From positions 248,001 through 312,000 of the forward strand of contig NIVC01000992.1 of the NCBI GenBank assembly GCA_002269645.1: a stretch of 64,000 nucleotides of DNA, written 5' to 3'. Below, piece by piece: positions 12,121 to 58,384 of this stretch. This DNA comes from Macrostomum lignano. Its lineage: Eukaryota. How positions within the stretch are numbered: the stretch's first letter is position 1; each line of letters starts with the position of its first letter. A program made the position numbers and the translations under genes. Under the pieces are notes generated by a model. That model made no database searches, was not told the DNA's origin, and was given only the letters and a program-made list of their open reading frames with translations.

Positions 12121-12380
12121 TGAAGTAGCTGAAGGAAGATGAGAGGAGATGAGAGATTAGAGAAGAGAGAGAGAGAGATAAGAGGAGAGGTGAGAGATAA
12201 GATAAGATAAGAAAGATGAGAGGATAGTAGAAAGAGGACAGGAGAGGACAGGAGAGGAGAGGAGAGGAGAGAGATAAGATGAGAGATGAGAGATAAGAGG
12301 AGCAAGAAGAGATAAAAGAGATGATGTGAAAGAGATCTGCTGAGAGAGATGAGAGGAGAGGAGAGAGAATGGATGATGAA
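12121..12380 (+). repeat. GA-rich low-complexity tract
   Basis: GAGAG/GATAA/GAGGA degenerate units. Confidence 0.85.
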
Positions 12381-14040: not shown

Positions 14041-14110
14041 CACTAAATCAAACCCATTTGATTACAATATTAAACCAGTCGCACAAATAGAATCTTCACA
14101 GGCTCAAAAA

Positions 14111-26100: not shown

Positions 26101-29100
26101 GATAGATAGACACACAAGACACTGATAGATAGACACACAAGACACTGATAGATAGACACACAAGACACTGATAGATAGACACACAAGACACTGATACATG
26201 ATACACAGATACACACAAGACACTGATAGATGATACAGATACGAGCGTACACACAAGACACTGATAGATGATACAGATACACATAAGACACTGATACATG
26301 ATACACAGATACACACAAGACACTGATAGATGATACAGATACACACAAGACACTGATACATGATACACAGATACACACAAGACACTGATAGATGATACAG
26401 ATACACACAAGACACTGATACATGATACACAGATACACACAAGACACTGATACATGATACCTAGACACACAAGACACTGATACATGATACCTAGACACAT
26501 AAGACACTGATACATGATACACATATACACATAAGACACTGATACATGATACACATACACATAAGACACTGATACATGATACACATATACACACAAGACA
26601 CTGATACATGATACCTAGACACACAGGACACTGATACATGATACACAGATACACACAAGACACTGATAAATAACCCATCAGACAACTCACCGTAAAACTT
26701 AAGCGATTCGCACTCCATAGGGCACACTAGCGAAGCAGCCTCTGTAGACACCAAATCGTCCAGCCTCTTCTCGCCGTGATGCAGCTCGCAGCTGACTTTA
26801 ATCTTCGAATAGCGCGAGCTTAACGAATCGTTGCCAGGCAGCCTATGCAGCGAACTGACGCAGACGTAAAAATACTCGTGAAAACTGCCAGCCTGCTCCT
26901 CCTGCATGGCCTGACAGCAGCCGTACGGCGTGTCCCAAGTCGATATCTTCGATAGCTGCGCATCCTCGCAACAGAAATGATAATTAGCCGACCAGCAGAA
27001 GCAAAACAAATTCACCTGTTGCAGAAGCGACTCTTGCAACAATTCTAATTTATCAACTAGGGTATTCCTAGGCAACTCGTGCTGGTGATACTTCATGATA
27101 GTCTCGATGTCGTTAATGTATCTGAGAATATCTGGCAGAATTAGATTGCCGCATTTGGTGCAGATGAACTTGACTATCTGAATCAGATGGGTCAGGCTGG
27201 AGTCCTGCGATTGGCCGCTTAGCAGGGCCTGCTTTTGGCGCAGGAATTCGTTTAACAACTGGCTGATTGCAGCGCTGGAGTAGGCGGGGGTGGGTGTGCT
27301 TTTGTAGACTTGCTTGCTCCATTGTTCTGAATTAATCATCAGAAATGATTAGAATTGCTTTGCTTGCTTTGGGGGAGACTGACAGGACGGAGTGGGATGG
27401 AGAGTGACAAGACAGAATGAAAGGGAGAGTGACAAGGCAGAGTTGGATGGAGAGTGACAAGAAATAATGAGAGGGAGAGTGACATAACAGAGTGGGAGGG
27501 AGTGTGACAATCCAGAGTGACAAGTAGAGTGACAAGCCAGAGTGGGAAGTAGAGTGACAGGGCAGAACGAGAGGGAGAGTGACAAGCCAGAGTGAGAAGT
27601 AGAGTGACAGGGCAGAACGAGAGGGAGAGTTACAAGACAGAATGAGGGGGAGAGTGACAAGCCAAGTGAGTAGAGTGACAAGCCAGGGTGAGAAGTAGAG
27701 TTACAAGACAGAATGAGAGGGAGAGTGACATAACAGAGTGGGAGGGAGTGTGACAATCCAGAGTGACAAGTAGAGTGACAAGCCAGAGTGAGAAGTAGAG
27801 TGACAGGGCAGAACGAGAGGGAGAGTGACAAGCCAGAGTGAGAAGTAGAGTGACAGGGCAGAACGAGAGGGAGAGTTACAAGACAGAATGAGAGGGAGAG
27901 TGACAAGCCAAGTGAGTAGAGTGACAAGCCAGGGTGAGAAGTAGAGTTACAAGACAGAATGAGAGGGAGAGTGACAAGCCAAGTGAGTAGAGTGACAAGC
28001 CAGAGTGAGAAGTAGAGTGACAAGCCAGAGTGAGAAGTAGAGTGACAAGCCAGAGTGAGAAGTAGAGTGACAAGCCAGAGTGAGAAGTAGAGTGACAAGG
28101 CAGAACGAGAGGGAGATGTGACAAGACAGAATGAGAGGGAGAGTGACAAGACATAATGAGAGGGAGAGTGACATAACAGAGTGGGAGGGAGTGTGACAAT
28201 CCAGAGTGACGAGTAGAGTGACAAGCCAGAGTGAGAAGTAGAGTTACAAGACAGAATGAGAGGGAGAGTGACAAGCCAGAGTGAGAAGTAGAGTTACAAG
28301 ACAGAATGAGAGGGAGAGTGACAAGCCAGAGTGAGAAGAAGAGTGACAAGGAAGAACGAGAGGGAGAGTGACAAGACATAATGAGAGGGAGAGTGACAAG
28401 ACATAATGAGAGGGAGAGTGACAAGACATAATGAGAGGGAGAGTGACAAGACATAATGAGAGGGAGAGTGACAAGACATAATGAGAGGGAGAGTGACATG
28501 ACATAATGAGAGGGAGAGTGACAAGACATAATGAGAGGGAGAGTGACAAGACGGAATAAGAGGGAGACCGTGTAAAAAATAAGACACCTGGGCCTCACCT
28601 GTCCACATCGCAACTGAAACTGCTGTACTTTGCGGGCAGGTGAAAGGCGGCCTCCAGATCCTCTTTGCTCCGGCCAAGAAATCGCCTGGGATCGCGGATG
28701 TCACTGATGCGCTCCAGGCTGAATTCGTAGCGTTGACAGCGGCAGGTCTCTTGGAATACGGAGTGACTGCGCAGGGCCTCGTCTCTGCGGGTTTTGTGAC
28801 AACAACTGATGGTGATTTTAGCCCGATAGAGGAAAGATAGAGGGGAATCAGACAGGGGAAGATCGGAGGGGGAATCAGACAGGGGAGGATCGTAGGGGGA
28901 ATCAGACAGGGGAGGATCGGAGGGGGAATCAGACAGGGGAGGATCGTAGGGGGAATCAGACAGGGGAGGATCGGAGGGGGAATCAGACAGGGGAGGATCG
29001 TAGAGGGAATCAGACAGGGGAGGATCGAAGGGGGAATCAGACAGGGGAAGATCGGAGGGGGGACTCAGACAGGCAAGGATTGGAGGGACTCAGACAGGCG

Positions 29101-37479: not shown

Positions 37480-37895
37480 AAACGGCCCGGTTCAAACAGT
37501 CCGTTGAATAGTCTACACCACAAAACGGCCCCTTTTGAACAGTCTACACTATAATACGGCCCTTTTTTAAACAGTCTACCATAAAACGGCCCTTTTTGAA
37601 CAGTCTACCACAACACGGCCCCTTTTAAACAGTCTACCACAAAATGGCCCTTTTTGAACAGTCTACCACAAAATGGCCCTTTTTGAACAGTCTACCAAAA
37701 AACGGCCCTTTTTGAACAGTCTACCAAAAAACGGCCCTTTTTGAACAGTCTACACCAGAAAACGGCCGTTTTTGAACAGTCTACACCAGAAAACGGCCCT
37801 TTTTGAACAATCTACCACAAAACGGCACTTTTTGAACAGTCTACACCAGAAAACGGCCCTTTTTGAACAGTCTACTACAAAACGGCCCTTTTTAA
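37480..37895 (+). repeat. 29-bp minisatellite (AAAACGGCCCTTTTTGAACAGTCTACCAC) downstream of PDK
   Basis: Period 29; related to the PDK intron 3 array. Confidence 0.9.
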
Positions 37896-38135: not shown

Positions 38136-41100
38136 TCACAAACGAAACTGACTGCTCAGCGATGGATTACTCCAGTCTGGCACTGGCAGATTTGCTGTAT
38201 ATCGTTTAGCCGATGTGATATTAAACACTGGCAATAGTTCGTTAGCCTCGTCGCTAGATTTCTTTAAATAGATATAAGCATCTGTGCCGTAGCCTTCAAC
38301 GCTGGCTAGGGCTAGTTCGCCGTGCAAATAGCGGGCGTAGATGCGCGATAGCGGCAGGCCATAGCCGTACCCAGCTAGAGGCGGCCCAGTAGACGATGAC
38401 GGGCTCACGGGCGAGGCAGTGGTGTACGTGTATTTGAACACTAGCGGCAGCTCGGACCGGGCGATACCGCCGCCTTGGTCCGACACCTGAAGCGGCGAGG
38501 TGAGGGAGGGTTTGCAGTTGCGAAGGGTACATTGTTAAAACGGCCCATTTTAAACAGACATTGTTAAAACGGCCCATTTTAAACAGACATTGTTAAAAAC
38601 GGCCCCATTTCAAACAGACGCTGTTAAAACGGCCCCATTTCAAACAGACATTGTTAAAACGGCCCATTTTAAACAGAAATTGTTAAAAACGGCCCCATTT
38701 CAAACAGACGCTGTTAAAACGGCCCCATTTCAAACAGACATTGTTAAAAACGGCCCATTTTAAACAGACATTGTTAAAAACGGCCCATTTTAAACAGACA
38801 TTGTTAAAACGGCCCATTTTAAACAGACATTGTTAAAACGGCCCATTTTAAACAGACATTGTTAAAACGGCCCATTTTAAACAGACATTGTTAAAACGGC
38901 CCATTTTAAACAGACATTGTTAAAACGGCCCATTTTAAACAGAAATTGTTAAAAACGGCCCCATTTCAAACAGACGCTGTTAAAACGGCCCCATTTCAAA
39001 CAGACATTGTTAAAAACGGCCCATTTTAAACAGACATTGTTAAAAACGGCCCATTTTAAACAGACATTGTTAAAAACGGCCTATTTTGAACAGACATTGT
39101 TAAAACGGCCCATTTTAAACAGACATTGTTAAAACGGCCCATTTTAAACAGACATTGTTAAAACGGCCCATTTTAAACAGACATTGTTAAAACGGCCCAT
39201 TTTAAACAGAAATTGTTAAAAACGGCACCATTTCAAACAGACATTGTTAAAAACGGCCTGATTTCAAACAGACGTTGTTAAAACGGCTCATTTTAAACAG
39301 AAATTGTTAAAAACGGCCCCATTTCAAACAGACATTGTTAAAAACGGCCCATTTTAAACAGACATTGTTAAAAACGGCCTATTTTGAACAGACATTGTTA
39401 AAACGGCCCATTTTGAACAGACATTATAAAAACGGCAATTTTGAAGACATTTTAAAACAGCTTCTTTTTAATAGACGTTGATAAAACGGCTCATTCTAAA
39501 CCGTCCAAAAGTGTCTATTTAAACCAGCTATTTTATTTTCTCTTTATTTTAAGAAGCTGTCTGTATGAGTTAGTCGTGTCTGTCACAGATGTTGGTGCTT
39601 GTTTCGAATAGTCTTAACGAAACAACTCACCCGAATAGTCAAATCCTCTTTACCAACGCAGATCATAACGTGAATAGGCGGCATGTTATCCTCATTCTTT
39701 TCAACCAAGGCTCGCATAGAATTTTTAATAATTTCGAACACCATATGATAGAGATGCGACGGCACATAGGCAAACTCGGTGGTCTTGTCCAGGCCAATCA
39801 CCTGAGTAGTCATGGACGGCGCAGTCAGGTAGAACTGTTCGCACAAGAATCTGGCACTATTGTAGGCGTGGTCAATTACGCCCATAATGTCGCAGTGAGG
39901 ATCTATACTGCCAATCTGTCGGTTGTTGCGAAGATCCGGGCCGAATAAAATCACTGCAAAGTCCCATAGCAACAGGGATTTATCTAGCATTATTTAAGCA
40001 AACGATAGTTATAGTTCCCTTAGCTTCGTCTTTCGAGCTTCCCGTGGATCAATCACATAGCAACGGGGATTTCCATAGTACAGCCATAGTAACGGGGATT
40101 TACATAGTACACCCAAAGCAACAGGGATTTCCCTTGTACATCCATAGCAACGGGATTTCCCTAGTACATCCCTGGTAACCGGGATTTTCCTAGTACATCC
40201 ACAGCAATGGGGATTTCCCTAGTACATCCATAGTAACGGAGATTTCCCTAGTACATCCATAGTAAACGGGGATTTCCCTAGTACATCCAAAGTAACTAAG
40301 ATTCCCTAGTACATTCATAGTAACGGGGATTTCTCTAGTACATCCATAGCAACGGGGATTTCCCTAACATCCATAACAACGAGGATTTCCCTAACATCCT
40401 CAGCAATGGGGATTTCCCTAGTACATCCATAGCAACGGTGATTTCCTTAACATCCTTAGCAACGCGGATTTCCCTAACATCCTTAGCAACGGGGATTTTC
40501 CTAACATCCTTAGCAACGAGGATTTCCCTAACCTCCTTAGCAACGGGGATTTCCCTAGTACATCCATAGTAACGGAATTTACCTCAAATAGTGTTCACAA
40601 GAAAAAAACAGACACAGAAACAGGATTTTTTCTACCCCTCCCCCCTTAGTAACAAGGACCCCATCAGATGAATGCATAAAAGAATACATCTGTCTGTAAC
40701 TCACCGTGCTGACTAATCAACATTCGAATACTAATTCGACTCATATAGAATCGATCCAGGAAGTACTGCACCTGAGCTTCCGTCTGGGTATCCAGGTCGC
40801 CTTCTCGCTCTTTAAGTTCTAATACGCCTTGAGCCATGGTCTCAACAACTTCCCGATGGCGTTCAAGGATTTGAGCCAATGTCTCAGTGAAGTCGGTCAA
40901 ACGTCCATCGCTAGGACGCTTGGGTTCGTCCTTGAAAGCTAGCATATCAAGGAAGCTCTGCTTGTACAAACCAATCACTGTTTTAGTTGACGGCATGGTG
41001 ACCAGACTCTCTGGCAGTAGGTGAATCTCTTGCATTATGTTGGCTAAACGTACTGGCACCTCGTGGCGAAGGAATTTGAATGAATTCTCCTGGGACGGAT

Positions 41101-42497: not shown

Positions 42498-44419
42498 CTT
42501 ATTGATAACTTTTATGCCTTATAGGAAGAACATTTTATGCTTGCAATCATTACAAGGATAATGTTTTCACAAGGCTCTATACCAAGCCCATATAAAAGGA
42601 TCACTTCTTCATTACACATCAAATTTAGTAGACTTCATTACATTTTCTATTCATAATAATTTAGTTAGCCAAAGGCGATTATACGGTTCAGTGCTTATCA
42701 AGCAAAGCTGACATTAAAAAACTGCATTTGGTGAACTATTTTGTGTTTTTCAGAACCCCAGAATACAGCCAAATAATAGAAGCTGTCGCTAAAAAGCATA
42801 CATTCTTACAATTCTCATTACACTAAGAAGTAGCTAGTTACTTTGTGCTAAAATCTAAAAATGGACATTCAGCATCCACAAGAAGCTTCCACATAGACCT
42901 TTAGCCTATAAGTATTTGTACTATTTTTAGCAACACAACATACAAGACCTACAGTCCTACATACGGTCTGAAAGTTAGTAAAAATGAACTTAAACTAAAC
43001 GAAACTCTTTCTCGAGAGTGGAAAAAGGAAAGACGCAAGAAATTTGTCACTTTATATGTCTGTATTTTTCAATTACCAGTCTTATTTCATAGGTGCACGA
43101 GACGGATGCATAAAAATTTTCAATTAAATAATTAGTTAACACTAATAGGTATCCAAAATGGCCTAGCAATTTGTGTCATTAACAAATAGTTCCCATTCCA
43201 GGCTTCCAATCTCAGAAACAAATTCTAGTAAATATCATCATATCAACTAAAGCGTAGATGATAATTAAGCAGAAGACTCAGATTTTCAGTAGTTAGCGCA
43301 GAAGTATACCCAACAACAGTCTGAAGTGCCACCCTCCACGCGAGTCGACATTGCTTGAAAAATCTGTGCACAGTTTAAAATCGCTATTAATTAAATAAAA
43401 TGCTGTAATAATCTATTGTAACTGACTGTCACCCCCTTTTCAAAGTTCGAGGCGTTGATGTGTGTGTAACTTATTAGATTGAATTTTGAATGAGAAGTTG
43501 TCTTCTTTGACTAAGCATGAAATACGCGCGGTTGGCACTTTTGACTTTTAAAAGGCTCGCATATAAATAAGTAAGGAAAAGTCTAATTTGTAGAAAAAAA
43601 TCTGTCAAAAAAGTTGAAAAACGTACACTCAGCAACATCAAAAACCGCCACCCAAGAGCATTGGCAGAGAGATTGACTTCGGCTCACTACACTGCAATGA
43701 CGCAAGGTTTTCCAACCCTGGCTCAGGGGCACTAAGGTGTGGGTCTAAGTTAACGGTTTTCAATGTTGCCGAGTTTTTTAGTTATAAAAAATGATGAAAA
43801 ACCTTAAACAAAAATTGACTAAAAATGAAAAAAACCACAGACACGTTCGTATGTATATATTATATACTGAAAGCAGGTATAGTTAAAAAATACCGCTGTG
43901 AGGACAATAAAAATGGATAAAAATATGGGAAATATAGCATAATATACACGTAATAACGCACTGTGGCTTAGAGCCTTTCCGACAGATTATGATTAGCTAT
44001 AAACACACTGTTAAATAGATGTTTACCCACACACAATATAAGTTATTTTCATATTTTCACAGTTGCTCCCTGATGTATAGCTATCCCGCCTATCCCATTT
44101 ACACTTTTCATCACGTGACTACTCTCACATCTTTATTGTGTCTATCTGTGCGGAGCAAATTACAGATACCGGTACAATACACATTTAGTTGGTAGCAATT
44201 TGTTAAACAATGGCCAGTTCACGCGCTCATGTCACACGCACTAGTATTTTGGCCATTGTTTCCCTCAGCTACATGATAAAAAAGCAATCTAAATTCTAAA
44301 AAACACGAAATAGCTAGGATTTAAATCATATCAGTGAATAACTTGGACGCAAAAAAAGTTTAGTAACTTAATTACAAAAGCAGTTTTTAGCAAGCTGTCG
44401 ATAATAATAAAAAACCCGC

Positions 44420-47400
44420 TCATAAAGGTCGCCAAACTGGATTGCTAACAGCGGGAAATACTGGTCTAACTGACCATTGAGCCGATTGGCTGGTTGCCAT
44501 CCAACTAGCAGAATCTGGCAATCGAGGAAGTAACAAAGGATTTCCAGTAGAAAATAGTACTGGTTGCTGCAGTTGCTGTTGCATTAGCAAATTAGGACGC
44601 AGCTGAGATTGAAGCTTTGGTGGAACATTCGGCTGAGGCACTGGTGGATGAGGCAAATGAATGAACCCAACTGAGCAACTTTTGATCTTCTTACGAGTAT
44701 ATGAATTATTGTCATTATTATTAGGACCTCTAGGTTCGGTTTCTTTGACATTTTCGTAAACAAGGAATAGACGCCGCTCTGGATAAGCAACAGTTGTAAG
44801 TGGATTCTGGCAAGCAGCCGGACACATAGCTAGTACGCGCAGATCGGGCGGCGGCAATAAAACTGTCAATAGGCGACATGCCGGCAAACCTACGTCCCAG
44901 ATAACGATGCCGCCAGCGTCAAGTATTAATAGGCGGCGATTTGTGCCAGAATAATCCACACTAGCAGTGGCCAAATCGCGAATTGGAGGCCGATTAGCTG
45001 GCAAATGAGGCAAAAATTGATTAGTACCAGCCGAATTAGACGAAAACTTTTGTAATACACAAAGACAGCATCGACGCGCATCAGCATCGGAAGCGTCGAC
45101 AAAAGCTAAATAGAATGCGTCGCCAACTAAGGCTAGTCCAGCGGGCCCGGCCTTTACTCCAAGCAGTATAGGCTCTTTGGCATCAAAGCGACCGCTGGCT
45201 AGATCGATGCCTACGGCTACAGCGACTCCATGTGGTTCTAGGATGCACATAGCAAACACACGATTGCGATAGACACCAACGCTTAGTCGACGAAGTGGAG
45301 CGAACAACTGACGATAATCCGAAACGCGACCGCTGCTGGGTAGCATCAATAGAAGCGAACCGGTGCTATCGGCTGCAAGAATTATTGGTGGCTCTCGGCT
45401 GTCAACTACTAAGTCATCAAAGCTGCCGCCATCAACTGGCATAGAGGCTGGCAGACCGGCCAAGTGATCGATGCGTGACGTCCAAGCAATCTGGCGACAG
45501 TTAAGTCGAGCACCGGCTGAATTTGAATTACCGGATCGAACAGACACAATAGAAGAACCGCTACCGTCGGAGTCGGTCTTTTGTTGTAAGGAGTAAGTAG
45601 TGTAGTAAAAAATTCTAGATGAACAAGGTACACAGCTAACTGATAAAAGTGGCGGAGGTGACACTTTTTCGCTGTCAAGATCAATTTGAATTCCGGAAAT
45701 CGGTAAAGGATCAAGCGAAACTAAGCAATATTCGGTGCTACCTGAAGCTTCCACGTGAAGTAAGCTCGGTGCTAGGACTAATGCTTGTCGACTGTCCGAA
45801 AAAATGACTGAGAACTGCTGCTTATTGAACTGATTTCGTGATACTGTTGAAATAGCTGGAGAATGGGCGCAAAGCTTTAGACGTATCAATGGTGCAAATG
45901 AGCCATGTGATAACAATAAAATACGCCGTTCATTGAATAGAAGCACTCCGGCGTCAGTAACTAAAACCGAGCGAAGAGTGCCGACATCTGTGTTTACAGC
46001 CAAAGCGTCGGGAACAAGAAATTTGCGTGGCGTATTAACGGTGCGGCCTGATGGATCAACAATCCAGACGAGGCAATGTCTCCCAAGCGGTGTGGATGCC
46101 GCAGCAAGCATTTGGCAACGAAAGTCAACTATGGGAGGCGCCGCTAAGCTTATGTCGACACCGGCGTGATCTAAAGCCGGTCGGGTAAAAAGTTTGTCGA
46201 ATTTAATCACATCATTTGATAAGAGTAGAAAAGATATGTCAGCTATTGTAAAATGCCTAATAGAGACGAAACCTGTGTTGGAGAGGCCGTGATTGAAATC
46301 GAGGGGACCCCAAATAGCAAAAAGCCAAAAAATATCGGTGTTGGTATTGACAGCTTTGGTTAAACATAGCGACACGCCCATCGGACACTCCTCAATACGA
46401 CAGGTTTCAGAACCTGGAAGGTGTAGCTCAAAGACACTATTGGAGACGCGGCGAATTAGATTATTGTACTCCGGATCAGGCGTTGCCATTTCCGACAGAT
46501 ACACCACCGGGTTAAGGAATTTAGAAGTGCTAAAGTGTAGACTATTAAGCGAAAGTAGCTTAACATTAGTGAACTTTTCGGCATTCTCTTCCATTAATGA
46601 CTCTTTTCGAAAATTTGCGCAAATTAAACAACCGTCGAGGAATCCGGCAAGTGACCAGTTGGTTGTTTCTGACATCGGTGTCAAATACACGTCTCTGTTG
46701 CAAACTATAACATCATCCTCATCTTTAATCTCAGAGTCAAGATTGGCAAAAAACTTAATCTGATCGCCACTGACTAAAATTGCACAGCTTGAAGCTTCAC
46801 CGAGTGGACTCAAAACTTGCTGCTGAGGCGGCCAAGGTAAAAACGGCGTAGAACTTAAATCAATACTCCTCAGATACCGACCGTCGAAACAATCGTGCAC
46901 ATCAACAGCATCGATATAAGCCAATAGGATTAGGCCACCATTAGGAAGGCAGCACATGTCAACCGGTAATTTATTTTTTTCGGTCGAAAATAAGACATCT
47001 GGTGGCAAATCATTCGCTAAACAAATACCTCCAGCTGTGGCGCGGACACGCAAAGCGACAACACGAATGTAAGCGACAGAAAGACCAGGAGCAAGAGAAG
47101 CTGAACGCGCTAATGCGACAAAGACGCGATTAAGCTCCGATGAGATTGAAAGAGCGACGATTTCTCCACCAAGCATTTTAGACGCAGCAAAACCCCTGGT
47201 CGAATCGAATAAGCGCAGAACTTCAGGCTCCTTGGTTGAAACGGTGACCATGCCAACAATACACCGACAAGATGTTTTAAACATTGCAGCACGAACTAAT
47301 CGAACGGATGGACCAGTAGCAACCCGAACAACTCCATTGACACCAGACGACAACATTAGATCACCAGCGCTGGTCAGAGCAGCCATTTCCGTAGGCTGCC

Positions 47401-49042
47401 CATCTTCATCAACACGCAGAACAGATAGCCAAGATGTTGTGGCTGGAAGCCAAAAGGAAGCGGCGAGTTCAATGGCTTGACTGCCATCGCCGCCATATTG
47501 CAACGATAGTGTACCCATAACCAGACAGAATTTATCTCCCGATCGACACAGAGCCGCAGCCTCAGAATTCGGATCAACAGATTCTATTTGTTTATAGCTA
47601 CGCAAAATCAAAGAACCATTAGACGCATCTTTGGCGTCGATAAACAGAATGGAGTCGCCAGAGTTGCTCAAACCTGTAAGAATTTCTCTGAATGTTATTG
47701 GTCGGAATCGTCCAATCGTGGGACAGTCGTCGAGTTGAGCGTCGCGCAGGCTGACACAGCCGTTGGCATCGGCAACTGCAAACAGACCGGAACCAGGCGA
47801 TGCAACAAGCTTAGGCAAAGAAACCGCATCAACAAACGGAAAGTCAACGACAAAGCGTCGCTGTTCTATGCCAGTGATGGCGTCTACAATGCAACCCACT
47901 CCAACAGCAAAGTCAACAATAATTGCAAGATTGATCGATGGTAAACAGCGCAATTTAATGGATGACAAAGCAGCCGCGTCTGTGACAATTTTGCAAGGGA
48001 CTAAATTAGTCGAAATGCGACAATTTTCTACACCTGAATTGGAAGCAACGATTGACAAGGATAAAAACTGGCCGCTATCGGTCAAGATAAGCGCACGCAG
48101 ATCCCGTCTGCAGTTTGATTTACCGACTTTATCCAGCAAAATGTTAGTACTATCGGCTGCCATTGGTCTACCAACATTCTTTGGAAATTCTATGCTCGTA
48201 ACTTCAACTTTTGATTCATCAGCAAGCCTCAGAATACGTAACTGCTCAAACTGGTCTTGTAACTTGCGAACGAAAAATATTGGAGGCTGCCATGCAAGCG
48301 GAGTCAAAAAGGCTAGCAACTCAAGGTCTACAAACACACGCTCGAAACTATTCTTGGCTCTGCTTAACTTCCAAATAAATGAACGCCCGTCGCTACAAAG
48401 AAGAGCTAATCCATGCTGCGATGAAGTCACGTAACTAAGGCTTGACCAATCAATTGGCTTCTCTGTCGATTCAACATTTATTGAAGGCATCAGCTCAACA
48501 AATTGGGGAAATATCGTTTCTTCCTTGCTTGAATTACTTTTGCTGTCATCATTACTATCTTCTTCACTTTTACTGGTATTGGCTGCATTATGCCGGATAT
48601 AGTCTTCAGGATTGTCCACAGCATCAGCATCTGAGGATGTTTTAACTACATCGGAGTCTAACTCGGTGACATTTGCTTTATTCTCATTAATACAAGAGTT
48701 GGTAGCTCCAATGTTTTCGGTAACAATACTATCTGCAGAAATACTTGTAGCCGATGCTTTGGCAACTGTAAAATCAACTTTAACAATAGGTTTTTTTTCT
48801 AGATCAGTGTCGTTGGACAACTCCGATACAGAACCATTATTTGCTATGCTTTCAAGGCGATCGGCTTCGAAATTTAGTCTAGTCAGACAGGAATTAATAG
48901 CCTCGTTGTTGCCTAACAACAATACTTGTTCCGCTTGGTTACGAAGTCGACGTAACGACGACCAGAGCGACTTGCGAAGCTGATTTGCCTGTTGCTGCTC
49001 TTGACTCTGCTGTTGTTGTTGTTCTGGCAGCTTGGACTCCAT
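44420..49042 (-). CDS. Intronless 1540-aa protein of unknown function (N-terminal helical segment, acidic linker, probable degenerate beta-propeller repeats, Pro/Gln-rich tail)
   Basis: Uninterrupted 4623-nt ORF of non-repetitive sequence with poly-Q near the N-terminus. An acceptor-like site lies 14 nt before the ATG and AATAAA ~280 nt after the stop. I recognise no family; the propeller call rests only on recurring short beta-strand-like motifs (e.g. ILLAYIDAVDVHD, VLVTDAGVLLF, LLILDAGGIVIWD). Confidence 0.85.
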   Translation of the reverse strand: MESKLPEQQQQQSQEQQQANQLRKSLWSSLRRLRNQAEQVLLLGNNEAINSCLTRLNFEADRLESIANNGSVSELSNDTDLEKKPIVKVDFTVAKASATSISADSIVTENIGATNSCINENKANVTELDSDVVKTSSDADAVDNPEDYIRHNAANTSKSEEDSNDDSKSNSSKEETIFPQFVELMPSINVESTEKPIDWSSLSYVTSSQHGLALLCSDGRSFIWKLSRAKNSFERVFVDLELLAFLTPLAWQPPIFFVRKLQDQFEQLRILRLADESKVEVTSIEFPKNVGRPMAADSTNILLDKVGKSNCRRDLRALILTDSGQFLSLSIVASNSGVENCRISTNLVPCKIVTDAAALSSIKLRCLPSINLAIIVDFAVGVGCIVDAITGIEQRRFVVDFPFVDAVSLPKLVASPGSGLFAVADANGCVSLRDAQLDDCPTIGRFRPITFREILTGLSNSGDSILFIDAKDASNGSLILRSYKQIESVDPNSEAAALCRSGDKFCLVMGTLSLQYGGDGSQAIELAASFWLPATTSWLSVLRVDEDGQPTEMAALTSAGDLMLSSGVNGVVRVATGPSVRLVRAAMFKTSCRCIVGMVTVSTKEPEVLRLFDSTRGFAASKMLGGEIVALSISSELNRVFVALARSASLAPGLSVAYIRVVALRVRATAGGICLANDLPPDVLFSTEKNKLPVDMCCLPNGGLILLAYIDAVDVHDCFDGRYLRSIDLSSTPFLPWPPQQQVLSPLGEASSCAILVSGDQIKFFANLDSEIKDEDDVIVCNRDVYLTPMSETTNWSLAGFLDGCLICANFRKESLMEENAEKFTNVKLLSLNSLHFSTSKFLNPVVYLSEMATPDPEYNNLIRRVSNSVFELHLPGSETCRIEECPMGVSLCLTKAVNTNTDIFWLFAIWGPLDFNHGLSNTGFVSIRHFTIADISFLLLSNDVIKFDKLFTRPALDHAGVDISLAAPPIVDFRCQMLAAASTPLGRHCLVWIVDPSGRTVNTPRKFLVPDALAVNTDVGTLRSVLVTDAGVLLFNERRILLLSHGSFAPLIRLKLCAHSPAISTVSRNQFNKQQFSVIFSDSRQALVLAPSLLHVEASGSTEYCLVSLDPLPISGIQIDLDSEKVSPPPLLSVSCVPCSSRIFYYTTYSLQQKTDSDGSGSSIVSVRSGNSNSAGARLNCRQIAWTSRIDHLAGLPASMPVDGGSFDDLVVDSREPPIILAADSTGSLLLMLPSSGRVSDYRQLFAPLRRLSVGVYRNRVFAMCILEPHGVAVAVGIDLASGRFDAKEPILLGVKAGPAGLALVGDAFYLAFVDASDADARRCCLCVLQKFSSNSAGTNQFLPHLPANRPPIRDLATASVDYSGTNRRLLILDAGGIVIWDVGLPACRLLTVLLPPPDLRVLAMCPAACQNPLTTVAYPERRLFLVYENVKETEPRGPNNNDNNSYTRKKIKSCSVGFIHLPHPPVPQPNVPPKLQSQLRPNLLMQQQLQQPVLFSTGNPLLLPRLPDSASWMATSQSAQWSVRPVFPAVSNPVWRPL

Positions 49043-49849
49043 GAAATAAATATTACCTGATTAGAAGTCATAACGCTTATACTAGAAAAGGTCAAGTGTG
49101 TCCCACAGATTAGTGTTTTACTGTTTTTAAACGGATGGAAATTCAAGACCAACGAACCAGTGTGTGTCGCAGACACTCTCAGGGGTAAGCGGAATAAGCA
49201 CAACTGCTTGCCTTCTCCTTAATGAATACAGGTGGCCCGTTGCCCTGATTTGCGGCACTGCCGTTTGCTATACATAGTTCGATGAAAAAATACGTGGGTA
49301 GGGTATTGTTTGGTACGATCTATCACTCCTATTGTAAAAACGGAAAGCAGAAATAAACAATATACAAGAAAGGAAGTCAACAGTTTGGCATTTATTTATT
49401 TAGTTTCACTGTTAGAAAATGTTAATGAGGGCTTTATGACATTAAAAAACAATACTATGCTATACAAAGCTACAACGGACAAAACATGTGAATGTAGATT
49501 AAATTTGGGTTAACTAATAATAGTAATTTTCCATCGATATTGGGTCAGCAACTGAGTTATCATACAAACCTTGCTAGGAATATGTTTCATATTTACAAGT
49601 AGCGAAAAAATTGAAGAAAGCAACAACTGATCAACAGAATACGATTCTGCGTTTCAGGGTAACAATAGTGCAAACAATGCACAAAAAGACAGAGGGAAAA
49701 TAATGGGGAATAAACGCGTATTCAGATAAGAGAAGCAAAATACAGGGTAAGACAATGGAAGAAATATAGATGAAAAGCGAATATATTGTAGAAAAGAGCG
49801 GAGAGAATGTAGGAGACAGCGGAGAGACGGTATCATTAGGAGGGAGCAG

Positions 49850-50375
49850 AGGGGTGGAGAAGAGGTTGGAGACAACAAAGAAAAGGTAGGAGGGAACGGA
49901 AAGGAGGTAAAAGGGAGCGGAGGTAGGAGGGAGCGGTGAGGAGGTAGGAGGGAGCGGAGGAGGTAGGAGGGAGCGGTGAGGAGGTAAGAGGGAGCGGAGG
50001 AGGTAGGAGGGAGCGGTGAGGAGGTAAGAGGGAGCGGTGAGGAGGTAGGAGGGAGCGGAGGAGGTAGGAGGGAGCGGTGAGGAGGTAGGAGGGAGCGGTG
50101 AGGAGGTAGGAGGGAGCGGTGAGGAGGTAAGAGGGAGCGGAGGAGGTAGGAGGGAGCGGTGAGGAGGTAGGAGGGAGCGGTGAGGAGGTAAGAGGGAGCG
50201 GAGGAGGTAGGAGGGAGCGGTGAGGAGGTAGGAGGAAGCGGGGAGGAGGTAGGAGGGAGCGGAGAGGAGAGGATAGGAGTGAGCGGAGAGGAGGTAGGAG
50301 TGAGCGGAGATATGAGCGGAGGAGGTAGGGAGGGAGCGGAGAGGAGATAGGAGGGAGCGGAGAGGAGTTAGGAGG
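49850..50375 (+). repeat. 21-bp purine-rich minisatellite (GGAGGGAGCGGTGAGGAGGTA) 3' of TAF9
   Basis: Direct reading. Confidence 0.93.
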
Positions 50376-50494: not shown

Positions 50495-51097
50495 TTAATC
50501 AGCCTCGGTAAACTTCCGTTTCAATGTGCCACTACCGGTTGTCGGAGCTGATGATCTGGCAGACGACCTGGCCGACGGCGTCGACACCAGCCTGTGTCCG
50601 ACCGCGCCAGATCTGCTGCCGCCAGCGCCAGACGCAACCACAGCCGCCCTGGCCTCGGCTTTGCGCAGCTTAGCCTTATAATTTGGCTGGGTTAAGCAAA
50701 ACTTCTCAGGCGGCAAACGGACTCCGCAATAAGTTTTAATTGGCGGCAATAGTTGAGCATTTTTTGTCTGAGCCACCTCGGTCAGCAGTTCACGAGGCGG
50801 CGGCGACACCAGATCTAAGTCGGCGTGACAGGCGGACGCTAGTTTTAAATCTTCTAAATCTACAGATTTCTTGCCAGCGTGTTGAGCATAAGCCCTGGCA
50901 TCGTCCAGCAGGTCAGTGCAGTACCGGTACATGAACTCTACCAGCTGCTGCACCACGGCCGGCTCGTAGTCAAACACGCCGCATTCGTTTAGCAATCGTT
51001 TAACAGTTTGTACATCGACAGAATCAGTCGCAACTGAATCTGTTGTGGCAGAATTTGAAGAAGCTGTCGACTGCTGTTGCTGCTTCTGGTTGCTCAT
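50495..51097 (-). CDS. TAF9: Transcription initiation factor TFIID subunit 9 (histone fold), 200 aa, intronless
   Basis: VKRLLNECGVFDYEPAVVQQLVEFMYRYCTDLLDDARAYAQHAGKKSVDLEDLKLA..PPPRELL..KNAQLLPPIK..GVRLPPEKFCLTQPNY is the TFIID-31kDa/TAF9 signature. The ATG at 51097 follows the acceptor-like attctctttactccAG; the track's 51136 start is probably an upstream extension. Confidence 0.95.
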   Translation of the reverse strand: MSNQKQQQQSTASSNSATTDSVATDSVDVQTVKRLLNECGVFDYEPAVVQQLVEFMYRYCTDLLDDARAYAQHAGKKSVDLEDLKLASACHADLDLVSPPPRELLTEVAQTKNAQLLPPIKTYCGVRLPPEKFCLTQPNYKAKLRKAEARAAVVASGAGGSRSGAVGHRLVSTPSARSSARSSAPTTGSGTLKRKFTEAD

Positions 51098-52649
51098 TTT
51101 AACTGGAGTAAAGAGAATGCAACAATAATACTGCACGTCTGCAAAACTTAACTATTAATATGATGGGTTTGATAAACATTTGTAAAGACACTTGTTGAAC
51201 TGCTAAAAATTAGTTTTAAACTGCCAGTAAGATTTCTACGTGAGTGCTTATCAATACTGAGTATGAGTATGTATGAGAAGTAGGCAGTGCAGTCACATTA
51301 ATCCATATACTTACCCTATATACTAAAAATGGGTTGTCTCTATAAAAGAAGTATCATGTCAAACACAAAAGAAGCATCATGTTAGACATAAAATATTCAT
51401 TTGGGAATCAAAAAGATTTCAAGGTTTGGACAATTGCTATAATGTAGTGACTTTTGGGGAGAATTGCAGATGTCAAGGCTTATGGAGGGAATCAAGATGT
51501 CAAAGATTATAGGGGGGGGGATTGCTCAGATATCAAGGCTAAGAGATCAAAAGTTACATTTAGTTTATTAAAAATGATTCCATTCTTTGTTGGCTTTCAA
51601 TAGGGGGGGGGGGCACTGATTGCTAGAGGTATCAAAAATATTTTGCTTGAGTCTCCAAACCCAGGGATTGAAAAAAGTTTCCTTTACAACAGCTTTGAAA
51701 CTAATAGCACTAAATACCCCCATATGACTTATATATTTGATCTAAAAACCTCTATATCTATAGCATCCTATAGACAACTAGCTATATTTTATAACTAGAG
51801 TCAAACTTTACAATTAATAGAAACCTTAAAATCTCAAGAATCCCAATAGTTATATTATTTATATATCAAATGAAACCTCAATTATAAAAAATAATTACTT
51901 ATTCTAACATCTAGCTTGGTAAACAATGTGCCAATATAGCATTTGGGGTTCAAGTTCAAATTTAGGGTACCAAAATTTAAGCTGATATGTTATGATATAA
52001 GTTATAACATAAAAATTAGCTTTTAAACTTCTTTATTATTATAGGCTTTATAGTAACTTGAATAATTTAAACTACTATGGTGCTTATACATTTTTCATTG
52101 GCAATAATCTTACAAAAGCTCTTTTGACACAAAACTCTTTAAAAGAGCTACATAAACAAGTTGTAAAATATGTTAGAGCTAGGGCCTAAGATAAATGTAT
52201 TTTTTAATGTTCAAACTTTTTAGGCACTAGCTCTAAGAATATCTAAATGAATAAATAGACAATACTAGGGGCCTAGATTTACATTTTAGTTTAGTCACAA
52301 AATTGCCATACATAATTAGCTATCAAACTTTTGCCACTAAGTGTTATAACTTAGGACCTAATGTATGCTTATATATATTTATTTTTGGAAGTTTAAAAAT
52401 TTGAATAACTGATAAAATGATCAAATTGGTAAACATGGCTCTTAACAGATATTAGTAGATAAGAAAGTGGTAGACAAAATATAGCAAACAAAATCCATGT
52501 CAACCCTAAGAACATATTGCTTATAGTTATAACATAAAAATGTTTTGTTGCAAAAGACAATATATGCTTCTTTGGAAATTGATGAAGCCTAAATATATAG
52601 ACATATAAAGAAATATAGAGAAATTATTCAAAAAAGTTTTTTAGGTAAG

Positions 52650-55664: not shown

Positions 55665-58384
55665 ATGAACGATGAGGAGTCACAGTTTCATATGGGCCAA
55701 AAGTTTGGCTCATATGATGAGCTTCAACTGTTTGTCCATAGATATGAGAAGGCCAACAACACCCAGCTGTTCAAACATGACTCCAGGACGATTGCTGCTG
55801 CACAGTCACATGTACCCAATCGGACTCTGAATCCAAGTCTTAAGTACTATGAGATTGTCTTCAGATGCATACATTTTGGAGAATAGAAGCGCACATCCAA
55901 AGGATTTCGCCCAAAGCTTAAAGCTTTAAGATTTCGCTTAAAAGCCTGCAATTTTGGCAACAACACAAACAATTGAGTAGAGAGCTTGAACCAAAAGTTG
56001 AAGGCTGTCGTGCCGCACAACTCCAACTTTCTTTTGTTCATTCAACGCCTTCTGCAGTTCATTTCATTGACAAGAATGCAGTGGAACAGCAAGATTGCCA
56101 CGACTCTTTGCAAGACAACAGTTCATTCATTTGCTGATGGCTCCACTGAGGACAAGTTTGCCAAGCTGTTGACACCATACGTACTGGAGAAGGTGCTAAG
56201 AGAACTGGAGAAGGCCAATGCACCAATGGCTTCTGCTCTGGAGGAAACGACGTCCACAATCTGCGTCTGCCCCTTCCATCGGCATTTTGCGTTGCCCTGC
56301 AGACACATCTTCCAAAAGCGGAAGTCTGAGGACTTGGAGCTGTTTGCTCCGGAGCTTTGCCAGCAAAGGTGGACACTTGACTACTACAGGCAATGCCGCA
56401 TTGACGAGGAGATGGAGACTGACTCAGCAAGATCAGCGGCGTTCTCCTTTGTTGGCACAAATACCTCACGCCGCATCAAGTCATACCAAGACAGATACCG
56501 CGAGGCGTTTCGTGTGAGTTCTTAATTATTTAAATATGAAATCTGTACCGAGGAATGCACCTTGCCAAGTGGCAGGTACAGATTTTTTCTATCTCAATAG
56601 ATGCCTGTCCATCCAATAGGATAAAACCCAAGAATACTTGTGTTATTGGCCAATTGCCAAGGTTTAGCAAAGGGGGTGCATCAAAAAAGTTAAATTAGAA
56701 GCAACCTTTTCTGTGCTCATTACACTTGTCTATCATATTTGTCAAAATTGAAATCAGAAACGAAAGCAGCAGAGTTGCTGTCAGTCATGGGCGTTTAGAT
56801 GAAAAACATCCTGTCTACTACTACTACCCTCACCCTTTCTCCATTTCTCTGCACAACTTTCCACTCCTGTCTTCGTTTGTCTAAACAGCATTTATTGTTT
56901 TTTCACCTCGCGCAGGTAACAGAAATGATTGAAATAATAGTACAGTGGATAGAACAAGTAATTGGAAACTTGTTGAAACATGTTTCATAGCTGAAATGCA
57001 AGTTGTACTGTCATAGCCTCCTGATACATGTTTTGTAAATCAATCACTAACGCATTGTAGGTTGCACAGCAACTATCATCAATGGCTGCGGAAGCGACTA
57101 GAAGCGATTTCGAATCACGCATCAGTGTACTACAGACGCTTGAGCGTATGTGGTGGATTGGAAGGCACATAGAAGTCTACGACGCTGAGGTGGGCAATCG
57201 CATGCTGATCAACAGTTCCACCGCTTCTCTCAGGGCCAAGAATGCACCTCATGAAAATCCAGAGGTAGTCACATCGCTCGAAGTTCTCGAACTTGAGATT
57301 GACCCCTGGCCTCTGACGGACTCTGCCACCACCAGCCAATATCCTCCGCCTGTGCCAGCCGATGCCGCCGCCGGCGGGGGACCTCCACCTGTGCCAGCCA
57401 ATGCGACCATCAGTGTGGAACCTCCGCCTGTGCCAGTCGATGCCGCTGTCAGCGGGGGACCCCCACCTTTGCCAGCCGATGCCGCGATCAACGATGTTGA
57501 TCCGAGGCCTTCTTTACCAACTTCTCAGTTCCCTACTTTCAAACTTGTGAGACCTGTAAGACGTCGCGGTCACCCTAGGGGTGCGGACACCACTGTCATT
57601 GGCCTAAAATGGCACAAGCGTCCCCGACTGACGACATTCCAAGATCTAAGTCTTCGGACAAAAATGCTTGGTGAGTTCTGCTCCAGTGCATCTGAAATGC
57701 AAAAATATTCCCATGCTCTTTCCGCTTTATACAAGCTAGGTCGTATGAATTTCAGGGCACATGACTTACGTTAGTTTTTGAAAATTCTTCCATCGTATCC
57801 AAGTTTACGTGAATGCGAGCGCTTACTCTGTAGGCTGGTGGACCTGCTCCCGCACCACCAGATGCTACCATCCCGAAATTTATTGCTAGCCTCCAAGCGG
57901 CTTCCCAGCACAGTCAAATCTTACAGTGTCCGTTTGCTACGCCCATATAAACCTTAACTGAATATACTAGCATTACTTGAAAAATTTGTTTGTGCATCAT
58001 CTCTTTCCTACAGTTGCTCTGCTATGGATCACGGATTCAGCAGCTTCTGCTCAGAGGATTCTAGACAAAAAGTGCCTGCTGACCCTAGATGATCTTTGCA
58101 ATCCTCCGAGGCCTGTTCTGCGTGACAAAAGGCAGCAAATAGATGAGCTCGTGGCGCAGCTTTGCACTCCACAAGCTATCCGGCAAGTGCACCACAACAT
58201 CCAGAGACTGAATGCTACGAGCTGGCTGTGCAACTCCTGTCGTAAGGCCCTGGACTCTGCTCTGAGCATCGGTTGCGACTGCTGCCTCGCTTGGGTTCAC
58301 CTTTCCTGTGAAGGCCTGACTTCAGAACCAAGTGAATCATTTTACTTCTGCAAGGTGTGTCGCGGCTCTGTGTTGGTTGATTAG
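55665..58384 (+). pseudogene. Disabled MULE transposase-like gene (ZSWIM3/FAR1-like N-terminus, SWIM finger, Pro-rich spacer, C-terminal PHD finger)
   Basis: Exons 55665-56513, 57061-57670, 58014-58384 with GT-AG sites and matching phases. In-frame stops: TAG 55884-55886 and TGA 55974-55976. SWIM: CVCPFHRHFALPCRH. PHD: CNSC..IGCDCCLAWVHLSCEGL..YFCKVC. NNTNN*VES matches the post-DDE motif of MULE transposases, but no DDE core is present. Confidence 0.85.

What the first reader, a model, noticed from the sequence alone, without database searches (positions are those of the whole stretch)
44420..49042. Orphan-like intronless 1540-aa protein between TAF9 and PDK
Seen: an intact 4.6-kb single-exon ORF in a region where multi-exon genes are broken up by repeat-filled introns. 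Layout: poly-Q plus amphipathic helix (1-70), acidic Ser/Asn linker (~70-180), ~1250 aa of beta-strand-like segments, and a P/Q-rich tail. No catalytic, TM or TE motif is recognisable. Inference: a scaffold of three or four highly diverged beta-propellers (NHL/WD40-like), perhaps from a lineage-specific family, a retroposed gene or a domesticated foreign gene. It is the best candidate here for a new protein family.
Basis: partly seen in the sequence, partly recalled or inferred. Interest (0 to 1): 0.7.

Follow-up and report, generated by a model that had tools for sequence, protein, structure and literature searches.

The report
Unplaced flatworm gene of unknown function
A real, transcribed 1540-residue single-exon gene of the flatworm Macrostomum lignano, already in GenBank as an unnamed hypothetical protein, has no detectable relative anywhere else, which is common in this genome, and its fold and function could not be settled here.

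Summary
It is the longest open frame in the window by far. The window is Macrostomum lignano scaffold NIVC01000992.1. The ORF is already deposited there as a 5'-partial, single-exon model, and that annotation is derived from transcripts. A second homeologous copy, PAA79779.1 'hypothetical protein Mlig025131g2', carries one frameshift.

Nothing else matches. This holds for Pfam, NCBIfam, PDB sequences, an exhaustive phmmer search of 1.84 billion representatives, word-indexed searches to E<=10, and a metagenome scan. Without homologues AlphaFold2 fails (pLDDT 31 and 35), so the multi-propeller idea stays untested. No propeller family model matches.

About 35% of ORF-bearing gene clusters in this species are equally unplaced, so the case is ordinary there.

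Two side results:
- The two copies are homogenised over the core (pS 0.002 against 0.06-0.07 in the neighbouring genes), so dN/dS on this pair is uninformative.
- One copy encodes its own ATG. The other has a trans-splice acceptor at that spot, where the spliced leader's terminal AUG would give the same N-terminus.

Best reading: a lineage-restricted or unrecognisably diverged intracellular protein. Low to moderate interest.

The parts
44420..49042 (-). Complete single-exon CDS, 1540 aa + stop. It equals P0002 (the model on M. lignano NIVC01000992.1) plus the first three residues MES.
48833..49042 (-). aa 1-70: poly-Q (EQQQQQSQEQQQ) followed by an amphipathic helix-like stretch. Hydrophilic, no signal peptide. 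Coiled coil not established.
48476..48832 (-). aa 71-189: acidic Ser/Asn/Thr-rich linker, probably disordered.
44723..48475 (-). aa 190-1440: hydrophobic core that looks globular, with 37 Cys. No family match, no significant internal repeats. About 9 recurring strand-turn-strand motifs (found post hoc). Fold unknown.
44423..44722 (-). aa 1441-1540: P/Q-rich, mildly basic tail that includes RKKIK. This is the only part of the ORF that diverges between homeologues as the neighbouring genes do (pS 0.073, pN 0.036).
49040..49051 (-). Start context ATTTATTTCATG. It matches 11 of the last 12 nt of the M. lignano spliced leader. The homeologue has ATTTATTTTCAG| here (a trans-splice acceptor, no ATG).
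44132..44137 (-). First AATAAA, 285 nt after the stop: candidate poly(A) signal. No A-run follows it in the genome.
43634..50034 (.). Block of about 6.4 kb with low divergence from homeologous scaffold NIVC01000617.1 (about 0.7% overall, 0.27% in the ORF core). Surrounding DNA and neighbour-gene synonymous sites differ by 3-6%. More divergent islands lie just 5' of the ORF and over the P/Q tail.
50495..51097 (-). Upstream neighbour TAF9 (single exon). Its deposited model starts 2 nt after a CTCCAG acceptor. Same strand, 1453 nt from the ORF start.
49884..50375 (.). Tandem array (21/61-nt units) in the TAF9-ORF spacer.
38136..41059 (-). Downstream neighbour: exons of a PDK/BCKDK-type kinase, with 29-nt tandem arrays in its introns.

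Best explanation
This is a genuine, transcribed, single-exon protein-coding gene of Macrostomum lignano (transcript cluster Mlig025131). At the sequence level it is restricted to that lineage. It encodes a large, soluble, non-secreted protein with four parts: a Q-rich helical N-terminus, a roughly 120-aa acidic disordered linker, a roughly 1250-aa hydrophobic folded core, and a P/Q-rich tail.

Shown: the gene is real, intact and annotated from RNA. It has one copy per homeologous scaffold in conserved synteny. It has no detectable relative elsewhere.

Inferred: it acts as an intracellular scaffold or adaptor. The N-terminal helix would mediate self-association and the large, probably beta-rich repeat-like core would bind partners. 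The low-complexity Q and P/Q ends and the RKKIK motif would fit a nuclear or condensate-associated role.

In the homeologue the mRNA appears to be SL trans-spliced, with the start AUG supplied by the spliced leader. In the window copy the AUG is encoded in the genome.
For: - The ORF is 4.6 kb. P(no stop) is about 1e-36, and it is 2.7 times the next longest open frame.
- The GenBank models P0002 and PAA79779.1 cover it. That annotation contains only RNA-seq-assembled transcripts, cut at mapped trans-splice and poly(A) sites (PMC5730564).
- The same TAF9-ORF-PDK order is found on two scaffolds.
- In the homeologue the CDS begins on the first base after TTTCAG. That matches the published trans-splice acceptor consensus [T/C]TNCAG, and the SL ends in ATG. 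SL-ATG + GAG TCC AAG gives MESK, the same N-terminus as the window copy.
- Two of the three indels inside the ORF are in frame: +9 and -6.
- There is no signal peptide or TM segment.
- There are no hits in Pfam, NCBIfam, PDB, 1.84e9 representatives, 5.8e9 clusters at E<=10, or metagenome contigs.
- 35% of M. lignano ORF-bearing gene clusters are likewise species-specific.
Against: - There is no direct evidence of translation or function.
- Between the homeologues the core has omega about 1.3 on only 10 changes, and the other copy has a 1-bp frameshift at codon 793. This pair therefore gives no positive evidence of purifying selection.
- Synonymous codon usage does not resemble TAF9 and PDK (GC3 0.39 against 0.53, on a small reference).
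- The scaffold and beta-rich parts rest on composition, a post-hoc motif and unreliable models. Periodicity analysis gave no beta signal.
- Published work says most SL-trans-spliced M. lignano genes are conserved ones (PMC8629364). That mildly favours a diverged conserved gene over a truly restricted one.
- The window copy's deposited model starts at K4, not after any AG. I could not explain this.
Confidence: 0.6

Rival explanations
1. It is a fast-evolving orthologue of a conserved eukaryotic multi-propeller or other large scaffold protein. Examples are a DDB1/CPSF160/SF3B3-type triple propeller, or a Tup1/Groucho/striatin/EML-type protein with an N-terminal oligomerisation helix plus propeller. 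M. lignano divergence would have pushed it below the limit of sequence detection.
For: - Large folded orphan proteins are rarely born de novo.
- The layout (Q-rich N-terminal helix, S-rich linker, large C-terminal globular region) resembles that design.
- Recurrent hydrophobic-D/S-x-G-hydrophobic hairpin motifs occur at about 9 sites, three of them spaced exactly 104 aa apart.
- DSSP of the aa 985-1440 model is almost all short strands.
- Alpha-periodicity is depleted in aa 1001-1440 (z about -2.6).
- Trans-spliced genes in this species are mostly conserved ones.
Against: - No WD40, NHL, Kelch, MMS1_N/CPSF_A or HELP model matches, even at E<=10, on the whole protein or on 10 overlapping fragments.
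- There are no PDB sequence hits.
- There is no hit among 1.84e9 representatives.
- There are no significant internal repeats.
- The motif was defined after looking at the sequence.
- The models have pLDDT 31-35.
Confidence: 0.3
2. It is a retroposed, horizontally acquired or transposon- or virus-derived gene that has been domesticated.
For: - The CDS is a single exon, in a genome that averages about 4.9 introns per gene.
- Codon usage is unlike the neighbours.
- The 4 nt before the first exon base in the window copy equal the last 4 nt of the spliced leader, as a cDNA-templated event would leave.
Against: - There are no hits to any bacterial, archaeal, viral or TE protein.
- There is no paralogue in the window, and the protein's database cluster has only two members.
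- No poly(A) remnant follows the 3' UTR.
- Only 12 nt, not the 35-nt SL, resemble the leader.
- Both homeologues are in conserved synteny and both lack introns.
- The neighbouring TAF9 is also single-exon.
Confidence: 0.05
3. It is a transcribed but no longer functional ORF: a recently dead gene, or an annotation artefact of pervasive transcription.
For: - Core omega is about 1.3 (8 non-synonymous, 2 synonymous).
- The homeologue has a frameshift.
- There are no homologues.
- Codon usage is atypical.
Against: - 1540 codons stay open.
- The downstream 758 codons of the frameshifted copy are also still open, so the frameshift is very recent or is an assembly error.
- The ten core differences carry no statistical weight (binomial P = 1.0).
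- The N-terminus MESK is preserved by two different start mechanisms.
Confidence: 0.05

Closest known systems
'Macrostomum-specific' genes of M. lignano as defined by Grudniewska et al. 2018 (PMC5816591), e.g. the Mlig-stylet genes; compare the flatworm-restricted Mlig-sperm1
   Same: It is expressed and annotated from transcripts. It has no homologue in human, planarian or schistosome, nor in any database searched here. It belongs to the roughly 35% of ORF-bearing clusters in that class.
   Different: No expression pattern or RNAi phenotype is known for it. It is unusually long (1540 aa) and looks folded rather than short or disordered. It lacks a signal peptide, unlike many reproduction- or adhesion-related orphans.
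Scaffolds with an N-terminal oligomerisation helix plus beta-propeller (Tup1/Groucho-TLE, striatin, ATG16L1, EML)
   Same: The order of parts is the same: Q-rich helical N-terminus, Ser-rich flexible linker, large C-terminal globular region.
   Different: No WD40 or HELP model matches at E<=10. The core is 3-4 times longer than one propeller. The fold is unverified and the coiled coil is unverified. This is a resemblance of layout only.
Triple-propeller proteins DDB1 / CPSF160 / SF3B3 (Pfam MMS1_N, CPSF_A)
   Same: They have about 1200-1450 residues of beta-rich sequence with weak or no canonical WD signatures, and they are soluble nuclear scaffolds.
   Different: Those Pfam models do not match. 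Those proteins lack a 190-aa Q-rich/acidic N-terminal extension and a P/Q tail. M. lignano would be expected to have recognisable orthologues of them elsewhere.
SL trans-splicing that donates the initiator AUG (flatworm spliced leaders ending in AUG)
   Same: The M. lignano SL ends in ATG. The homeologue's first exon base follows a consensus acceptor, and the SL AUG is in frame with the ORF.
   Different: Use of that AUG is inferred from sequence and from where the annotated CDS starts, not from reads. The window copy instead carries a genomic ATG at the same codon.

Membership tests
WD40 / NHL / Kelch and other beta-propeller repeat families (Pfam) | Match to the family's repeat profile above, or at least near, the gathering threshold | tested here: not met
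   hmmscan against Pfam-A at E<=10 gave 0 families, both on the whole protein and on 10 overlapping fragments of up to 300 aa.
WD40 / NHL / Kelch and other beta-propeller repeat families (Pfam) | Internal repeats of about 40-50 aa | tested here: not met
   Self-BLASTP found nothing. The best self-diagonal window score (34) lies within the shuffle range of 28-45.
WD40 / NHL / Kelch and other beta-propeller repeat families (Pfam) | Toroidal 4-stranded-blade fold | tested here: inconclusive
   AF2 single-sequence models have pLDDT 31.2 (aa 190-1389) and 34.9 (aa 985-1440) and are not interpretable. Foldseek was not run on them.
DDB1 / CPSF160 / SF3B3 triple propeller | Match to MMS1_N or CPSF_A profiles, or to solved members | tested here: not met
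   No Pfam hit. No PDB sequence hit at E<=10 other than noise.
Taxonomically restricted (orphan) gene | No detectable homologue outside the lineage | tested here: met
   Exhaustive phmmer against 1.84e9 representatives found only P0001 from M. lignano. Word-indexed searches to E<=10 found only P0001. The metagenome scan found none. Limits: single-sequence sensitivity, and other Macrostomum genomes were not searchable.
Taxonomically restricted (orphan) gene | Evidence of transcription | tested here: met
   Gene models exist in a GenBank annotation that is built only from assembled RNA-seq transcripts. The reads themselves were not inspected.
Taxonomically restricted (orphan) gene | Purifying selection on the protein | tested here: inconclusive
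   Homeologue pair: core pS 0.0022, pN 0.0028 (10 changes). Tail omega about 0.49, not significant (P = 0.17).
Processed retrogene | Intronless copy with a poly(A) remnant and an intron-bearing parental paralogue | tested here: not met
   It is intronless. No A-run follows the 3' UTR. No paralogue is in the window, and the protein's database cluster has only the two homeologues. Target-site duplications were not examined.
Transposon- or virus-derived gene | Similarity to RT, integrase, transposase or capsid proteins, and multiple copies | tested here: not met
   No Pfam or database hits. One copy per homeologous scaffold.
SL trans-spliced gene with an SL-donated AUG | Consensus acceptor at the first exon base, with the SL's terminal AUG in frame | tested here: met
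   Homeologue L001: TTTCAG|GAG TCC AAG, with the CDS starting at the G after AG. Consensus [T/C]TNCAG. The SL ends in ATG. Not met in the window copy, which has CATG|GAG.
SL trans-spliced gene with an SL-donated AUG | SL-containing reads mapping to the junction | not testable with these tools
   This needs the SL-read track of gb.macgenome.org or the raw RNA-seq.

The most novel reading that the evidence does not exclude
The roughly 1250-residue core is a genuinely new folded protein family confined to Macrostomorpha, not a diverged propeller or any known fold. That would make it one of the largest lineage-born or lineage-remodelled globular proteins known. In addition, the window copy acquired its genomic ATG, and its near-identity to the homeologue, by conversion templated on its own SL-trans-spliced mRNA.
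Probability: 0.12. Interest if true: 0.6.

Novelty: new member of a known kind. Interest (0 to 1): 0.3.

Why it matters
As it stands this is one more unplaced gene in a flatworm whose proteome is about one-third unplaced, so it does not change any picture. It would matter in three ways.

- **A large folded orphan.** If a deep Macrostomum alignment still gives a fold with no relatives, this is a long, folded, Cys-containing orphan. That would be a good case for asking how large new proteins arise.
- **A hidden conserved gene.** If profile methods show it to be a diverged core eukaryotic scaffold, it would illustrate how far M. lignano proteins drift beyond sequence detection.
- **The two homeologues.** They are a natural pair in which the same N-terminus is specified by a genomic ATG in one copy and apparently by the spliced leader's AUG in the other. 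The recent homogenisation of the ORF is also relevant to how subgenomes interact in this neopolyploid.

Tried and rejected
- **Full-length database search.** It returned nothing, not even the 99%-identical homeologue, because the 8000-candidate list was swamped by poly-Q words. I discarded it as uninformative and repeated it on the core.
- **AF2 on aa 190-1389 and aa 985-1440.** pLDDT was 31 and 35. I did not run Foldseek on them because matches to such models are meaningless.
- **dN/dS between the two scaffolds.** No power, because the core is homogenised.
- **Internal-repeat detection by self-BLAST and diagonal scoring.** Nothing above shuffles.
- **Hydrophobic-moment periodicity.** No beta signal. 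There was only weak alpha periodicity at the N-terminus and alpha depletion in aa 1001-1440.
- **Heptad scan of aa 15-72.** No clear register.
- **Codon-usage correlation with TAF9 and PDK.** The reference was too small (450 codons). The correct frame scored no better than the wrong frames.
- **PDB phmmer on the whole protein and on three core thirds.** Only noise: nanobodies, thymidylate synthase, G-gamma.
- **Pfam on fragments.** Only a TCTN_DUF1619 hit at E 0.65 in the low-complexity N-terminus, taken as noise.
- **Metagenome contig scan.** None.
- **Literature and supplement searches for 'Mlig025131'.** No mention.
- **cDNA-templated conversion as the cause of the low-divergence tract.** I considered and did not adopt it as the main reading. 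Low divergence also extends outside the transcript (window about 49434-50034 and about 43634-44234), so the tract boundaries do not single out the mRNA.


Full report
**1. The observation**

The ORF is real and sits exactly as described: 44420..49042 on the minus strand, ATG start, 1540 aa. Its stop-free frame is 4638 nt, while the next longest in any of the six frames of the window is 1701 nt. From local base composition, the chance of 1540 codons without a stop is about 1e-36.

Upstream on the same strand is a single-exon TAF9 (PF02291, E 1.6e-40). Downstream are exons of a PDK/BCKDK-type kinase (PF10436, E 6.7e-37; HATPase_c), followed by a PI3K. The PDK introns and the TAF9-ORF spacer contain 21-83-nt tandem arrays.

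The described layout holds:
- Poly-Q plus a helix-like stretch, aa 1-70.
- An acidic S/N/T-rich linker, aa 71-189.
- A hydrophobic, Cys-containing core, aa 190-1440.
- A P/Q-rich tail, aa 1441-1540.

There is no signal peptide. The most hydrophobic 19-mer contains two Asp, so no convincing TM segment exists.

**2. Where it comes from**

An exhaustive phmmer search of aa 190-1389 against 1.84 billion representatives found one protein, P0001. It is PAA79779.1, 'hypothetical protein BOX15_Mlig025131g2, partial [Macrostomum lignano]', on NIVC01000617.1 of GCA_002269645.1. That assembly is M. lignano Mlig_3_7 (PMC10733133; PMC5730564).

Its 90% cluster has one other member, P0002 (1537 aa). P0002 is the window's own protein minus MES and lies on NIVC01000992.1. 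So the window is M. lignano, and the ORF is already deposited as a 5'-partial CDS that is collinear with the genome (4614 nt).

The GenBank annotation of this assembly contains only genes assembled from RNA-seq (StringTie/TACO). Their ends are cut at mapped trans-splice and poly(A) sites by the TBONE pipeline. A deposited model is therefore evidence of transcription and of the single-exon structure. I did not see the reads themselves.

**3. Homology**

Nothing else matches:
- Pfam and NCBIfam on the whole protein gave no hits.
- Pfam on ten overlapping fragments at E<=10 gave only one noise hit, in the low-complexity N-terminus.
- PDB sequences, searched with the whole protein and with three core thirds, gave only noise.
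- Two word-indexed searches of 5.8 billion clusters with the core, to E<=10, found only the homeologue.
- A metagenome contig scan found nothing.

The first, full-length search missed even the 99%-identical homeologue, because poly-Q words filled its candidate list. It should be ignored.

There is no paralogue in the window and no significant internal repeat.

For context, 35% of ORF-bearing M. lignano gene clusters (10,499) have no homologue in human, Schmidtea or Schistosoma (PMC5816591). Being unplaced is the norm for a third of this proteome.

**4. Structure**

With no homologues to align, AF2 ran on a single sequence and failed. Mean pLDDT was 31.2 (pTM 0.28) for aa 190-1389 and 34.9 for aa 985-1440. 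I did not run Foldseek on these models.

The hints of a beta-rich, blade-like core are weak:
- A motif 'hydrophobic strand - D/S-x-G - hydrophobic strand' recurs at about 9 sites, for example LLCSDGRSFIW, LILTDSGQFLSL, AVADANGCVSL and LILDAGGIVIW. Three of them are spaced exactly 104 aa apart. By overlapping count the pattern matches 20 times, against 3.4 +/- 2.3 in shuffles. I wrote the pattern after reading the sequence, so this overstates significance.
- DSSP of the second model is almost entirely short strands.
- Alpha-periodicity is depleted in aa 1001-1440 (z about -2.6).

Against this, no positive beta-periodicity signal appears anywhere, and no heptad register supports a coiled coil. 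The multi-propeller proposal is therefore neither supported nor excluded. Membership of any named propeller family was tested by profile and not met.

**5. The two homeologous copies**

The scaffolds share the TAF9-ORF-PDK order. Within the ORF, the copy on NIVC01000617.1 differs by:
- 24 substitutions.
- A +9-nt insertion at codon 774.
- A -6-nt deletion at codon 1448.
- A 1-bp deletion at codon 793, which truncates its gene model to 807 aa.

The remaining 758 codons stay open in the shifted frame, so the frameshift is either very recent or an assembly error.

Divergence is strikingly uneven:

| Region | Total differences | pS | pN |
|---|---|---|---|
| ORF core, aa 190-1440 | 0.27% | 0.0022 (2 changes) | 0.0028 (8 changes) |
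| ORF tail, aa 1441-1540 | 4.4% | 0.073 | 0.036 |
| TAF9 | – | 0.060 | 0.009 |
| PDK exon segments | – | 0.067 | 0.013 |
| Flanking intergenic DNA | 2.3-3.0% | – | – |

Two synonymous changes against about 55 expected gives a Poisson P of about 1e-21. Because synonymous sites are as quiet as non-synonymous ones, this is not protein-level selection. It is recent homogenisation of a block of about 6.4 kb (window about 43.6-50.0 kb). More divergent islands lie just 5' of the ORF and over the P/Q tail.

The cause could be gene conversion between homeologues or collapse during assembly, and I cannot tell which. Core omega about 1.3 rests on ten changes (P = 1.0), and tail omega about 0.49 is not significant (P = 0.17).

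**6. The start codon**

- Window copy...ATTTATTTCATG|GAG TCC AAG.
- Homeologue...ATTTATTTTCAG|GAG TCC AAG. It has no ATG, and its deposited CDS begins on the G right after AG.

TTTCAG fits the published trans-splice acceptor consensus [T/C]TNCAG, which sits exactly at the junction (PMC8629364). The 35-nt M. lignano spliced leader ends ...ATTTATTGCATG. Trans-splicing of the homeologue would therefore give SL-AUG + GAG UCC AAG = MESK, the same N-terminus that the window copy encodes in its genome.

The four bases before the exon are TCAG in one copy and CATG, the SL's last four, in the other. The window's 12-mer matches the SL's end at 11 of 12 positions and is the only such site in the window. 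The difference could have arisen by ordinary mutation or by a cDNA-templated event. A third copy or an outgroup is needed to give it a direction.

Two further points:
- TAF9's model also starts 2 nt after a CTCCAG acceptor.
- TAF9's stop and the ORF's start are 1453 nt apart, about 490 nt of which is tandem repeat. Once the unmeasured TAF9 3' UTR is also subtracted, the pair would probably meet the paper's operon criterion of a repeat-adjusted spacing under 1 kb. Co-transcription is an inference.
- One loose end remains. The window copy's deposited CDS starts at K4, which follows no AG, and I cannot explain it.

**7. Interpretation**

- Shown: a real, intact, transcribed, single-exon gene, with one copy per homeologous scaffold in conserved synteny and no detectable relatives. 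No catalytic, TM, secretion or TE signature was recognised.
- Inferred (about 0.6 for the whole statement, much less for the mechanism): a soluble intracellular scaffold or adaptor. Its N-terminal helix would self-associate and its large folded core would bind partners. The low-complexity Q and P/Q ends and the RKKIK motif would fit a nuclear or condensate setting.
- Main rival (about 0.3, and not exclusive at the sequence level): a conserved multi-propeller or other scaffold that has diverged beyond detection.
- Minor rival (about 0.05): retroposed, foreign or TE origin. There is no parental copy, no poly(A) remnant and no hits, and synteny is conserved.
- Minor rival (about 0.05): a dead ORF. 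Against it, 1540 open codons are preserved, the same N-terminus is preserved by two start mechanisms, and two of the three indels are in frame.

**8. Verdict**

The orphan status holds. The propeller idea is untestable here. Retroposed or foreign origin is not supported.

The gene is a new member of a known kind: an uncharacterised, taxonomically restricted gene in a genome rich in them, already deposited as hypothetical. Interest is low to moderate (0.3). The most useful outcomes are the negative ones: no family match, no usable structure, and a homeologue pair that cannot support dN/dS. The two side observations, homogenisation of the ORF and the genomic versus SL-donated start codon, are also worth keeping.

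Noticed in passing
window 49040-49051 (-) and L001 9986-10003: The two homeologues specify the same N-terminus (MESK) in different ways. The window copy has a genomic ATG (…TTTCATG|GAG). The other has a consensus trans-splice acceptor (…TTTTCAG|GAG) and no ATG, so the spliced leader's terminal AUG would be the in-frame start. The four bases before the exon are TCAG in one and CATG, the SL's last four, in the other.
   Followed up: partly
window ~43634-50034 vs L001 ~9000-15400: A block of about 6.4 kb centred on the ORF is far less diverged between homeologous scaffolds than its surroundings. The ORF core has pS 0.002, against 0.06-0.07 in TAF9 and PDK. Divergent islands lie just 5' of the ORF and over the P/Q tail. 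The cause is gene conversion or assembly collapse, unresolved.
   Followed up: partly
L001 ~12378 (codon 793 of the ORF): A 1-bp deletion (GAAACAACC to GAAAAACC) truncates the homeologue's gene model to 807 aa. The downstream 758 codons remain open in the new frame. This could be a real early pseudogenisation or a long-read assembly error.
   Followed up: partly
window 51098-51110 (-); L002 7926-7939: The TAF9 model starts 2 nt after a CTCCAG acceptor, so TAF9 also looks SL trans-spliced. Here the SL AUG would open only a 3-codon mini-ORF (AUG UUA AAA UGA) overlapping the real ATG. TAF9, the ORF, PDK and PI3K are all on the minus strand. The TAF9-ORF spacing of 1453 nt stop-to-start includes about 490 nt of tandem repeat, so the pair probably meets the published operon criterion once the TAF9 3' UTR is subtracted.
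   Followed up: partly
window 49033 (-): The deposited CDS of the window copy (P0002) begins at K4 (AAG), 9 nt inside the ORF and not after any AG dinucleotide. The reason for this 5' boundary is unexplained.
   Followed up: no
window 55665-58384 (+): A run of plus-strand ORFs includes a SWIM-like CxC…CxH motif (CVCPFHRHFALPCRHIF, 55986-56525), a Pro-rich ORF (57082-57774) and a weak, sub-threshold PHD finger (57977-58384). It may be a transposase-derived or TE-borne gene.
   Followed up: no
window 24977-28704 (-): Long ORFs are open in several overlapping frames (up to 567 aa, no Pfam hit) in a stretch with strong AT skew (0.34-0.45). This looks like low-complexity or repeat sequence, probably within or next to the PI3K gene that starts at 34993.
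   Followed up: no
window 38529-39501, 40056-40575, 37504-37893: Three different 29-nt-unit tandem arrays (13-33 copies) lie in the PDK introns. Their copy number and sequence differ between the homeologous scaffolds.
   Followed up: no
window 47763-48434 (+): A 223-aa ORF lies antisense to the main ORF. It is most likely a by-product of the sense strand's codon composition.
   Followed up: no
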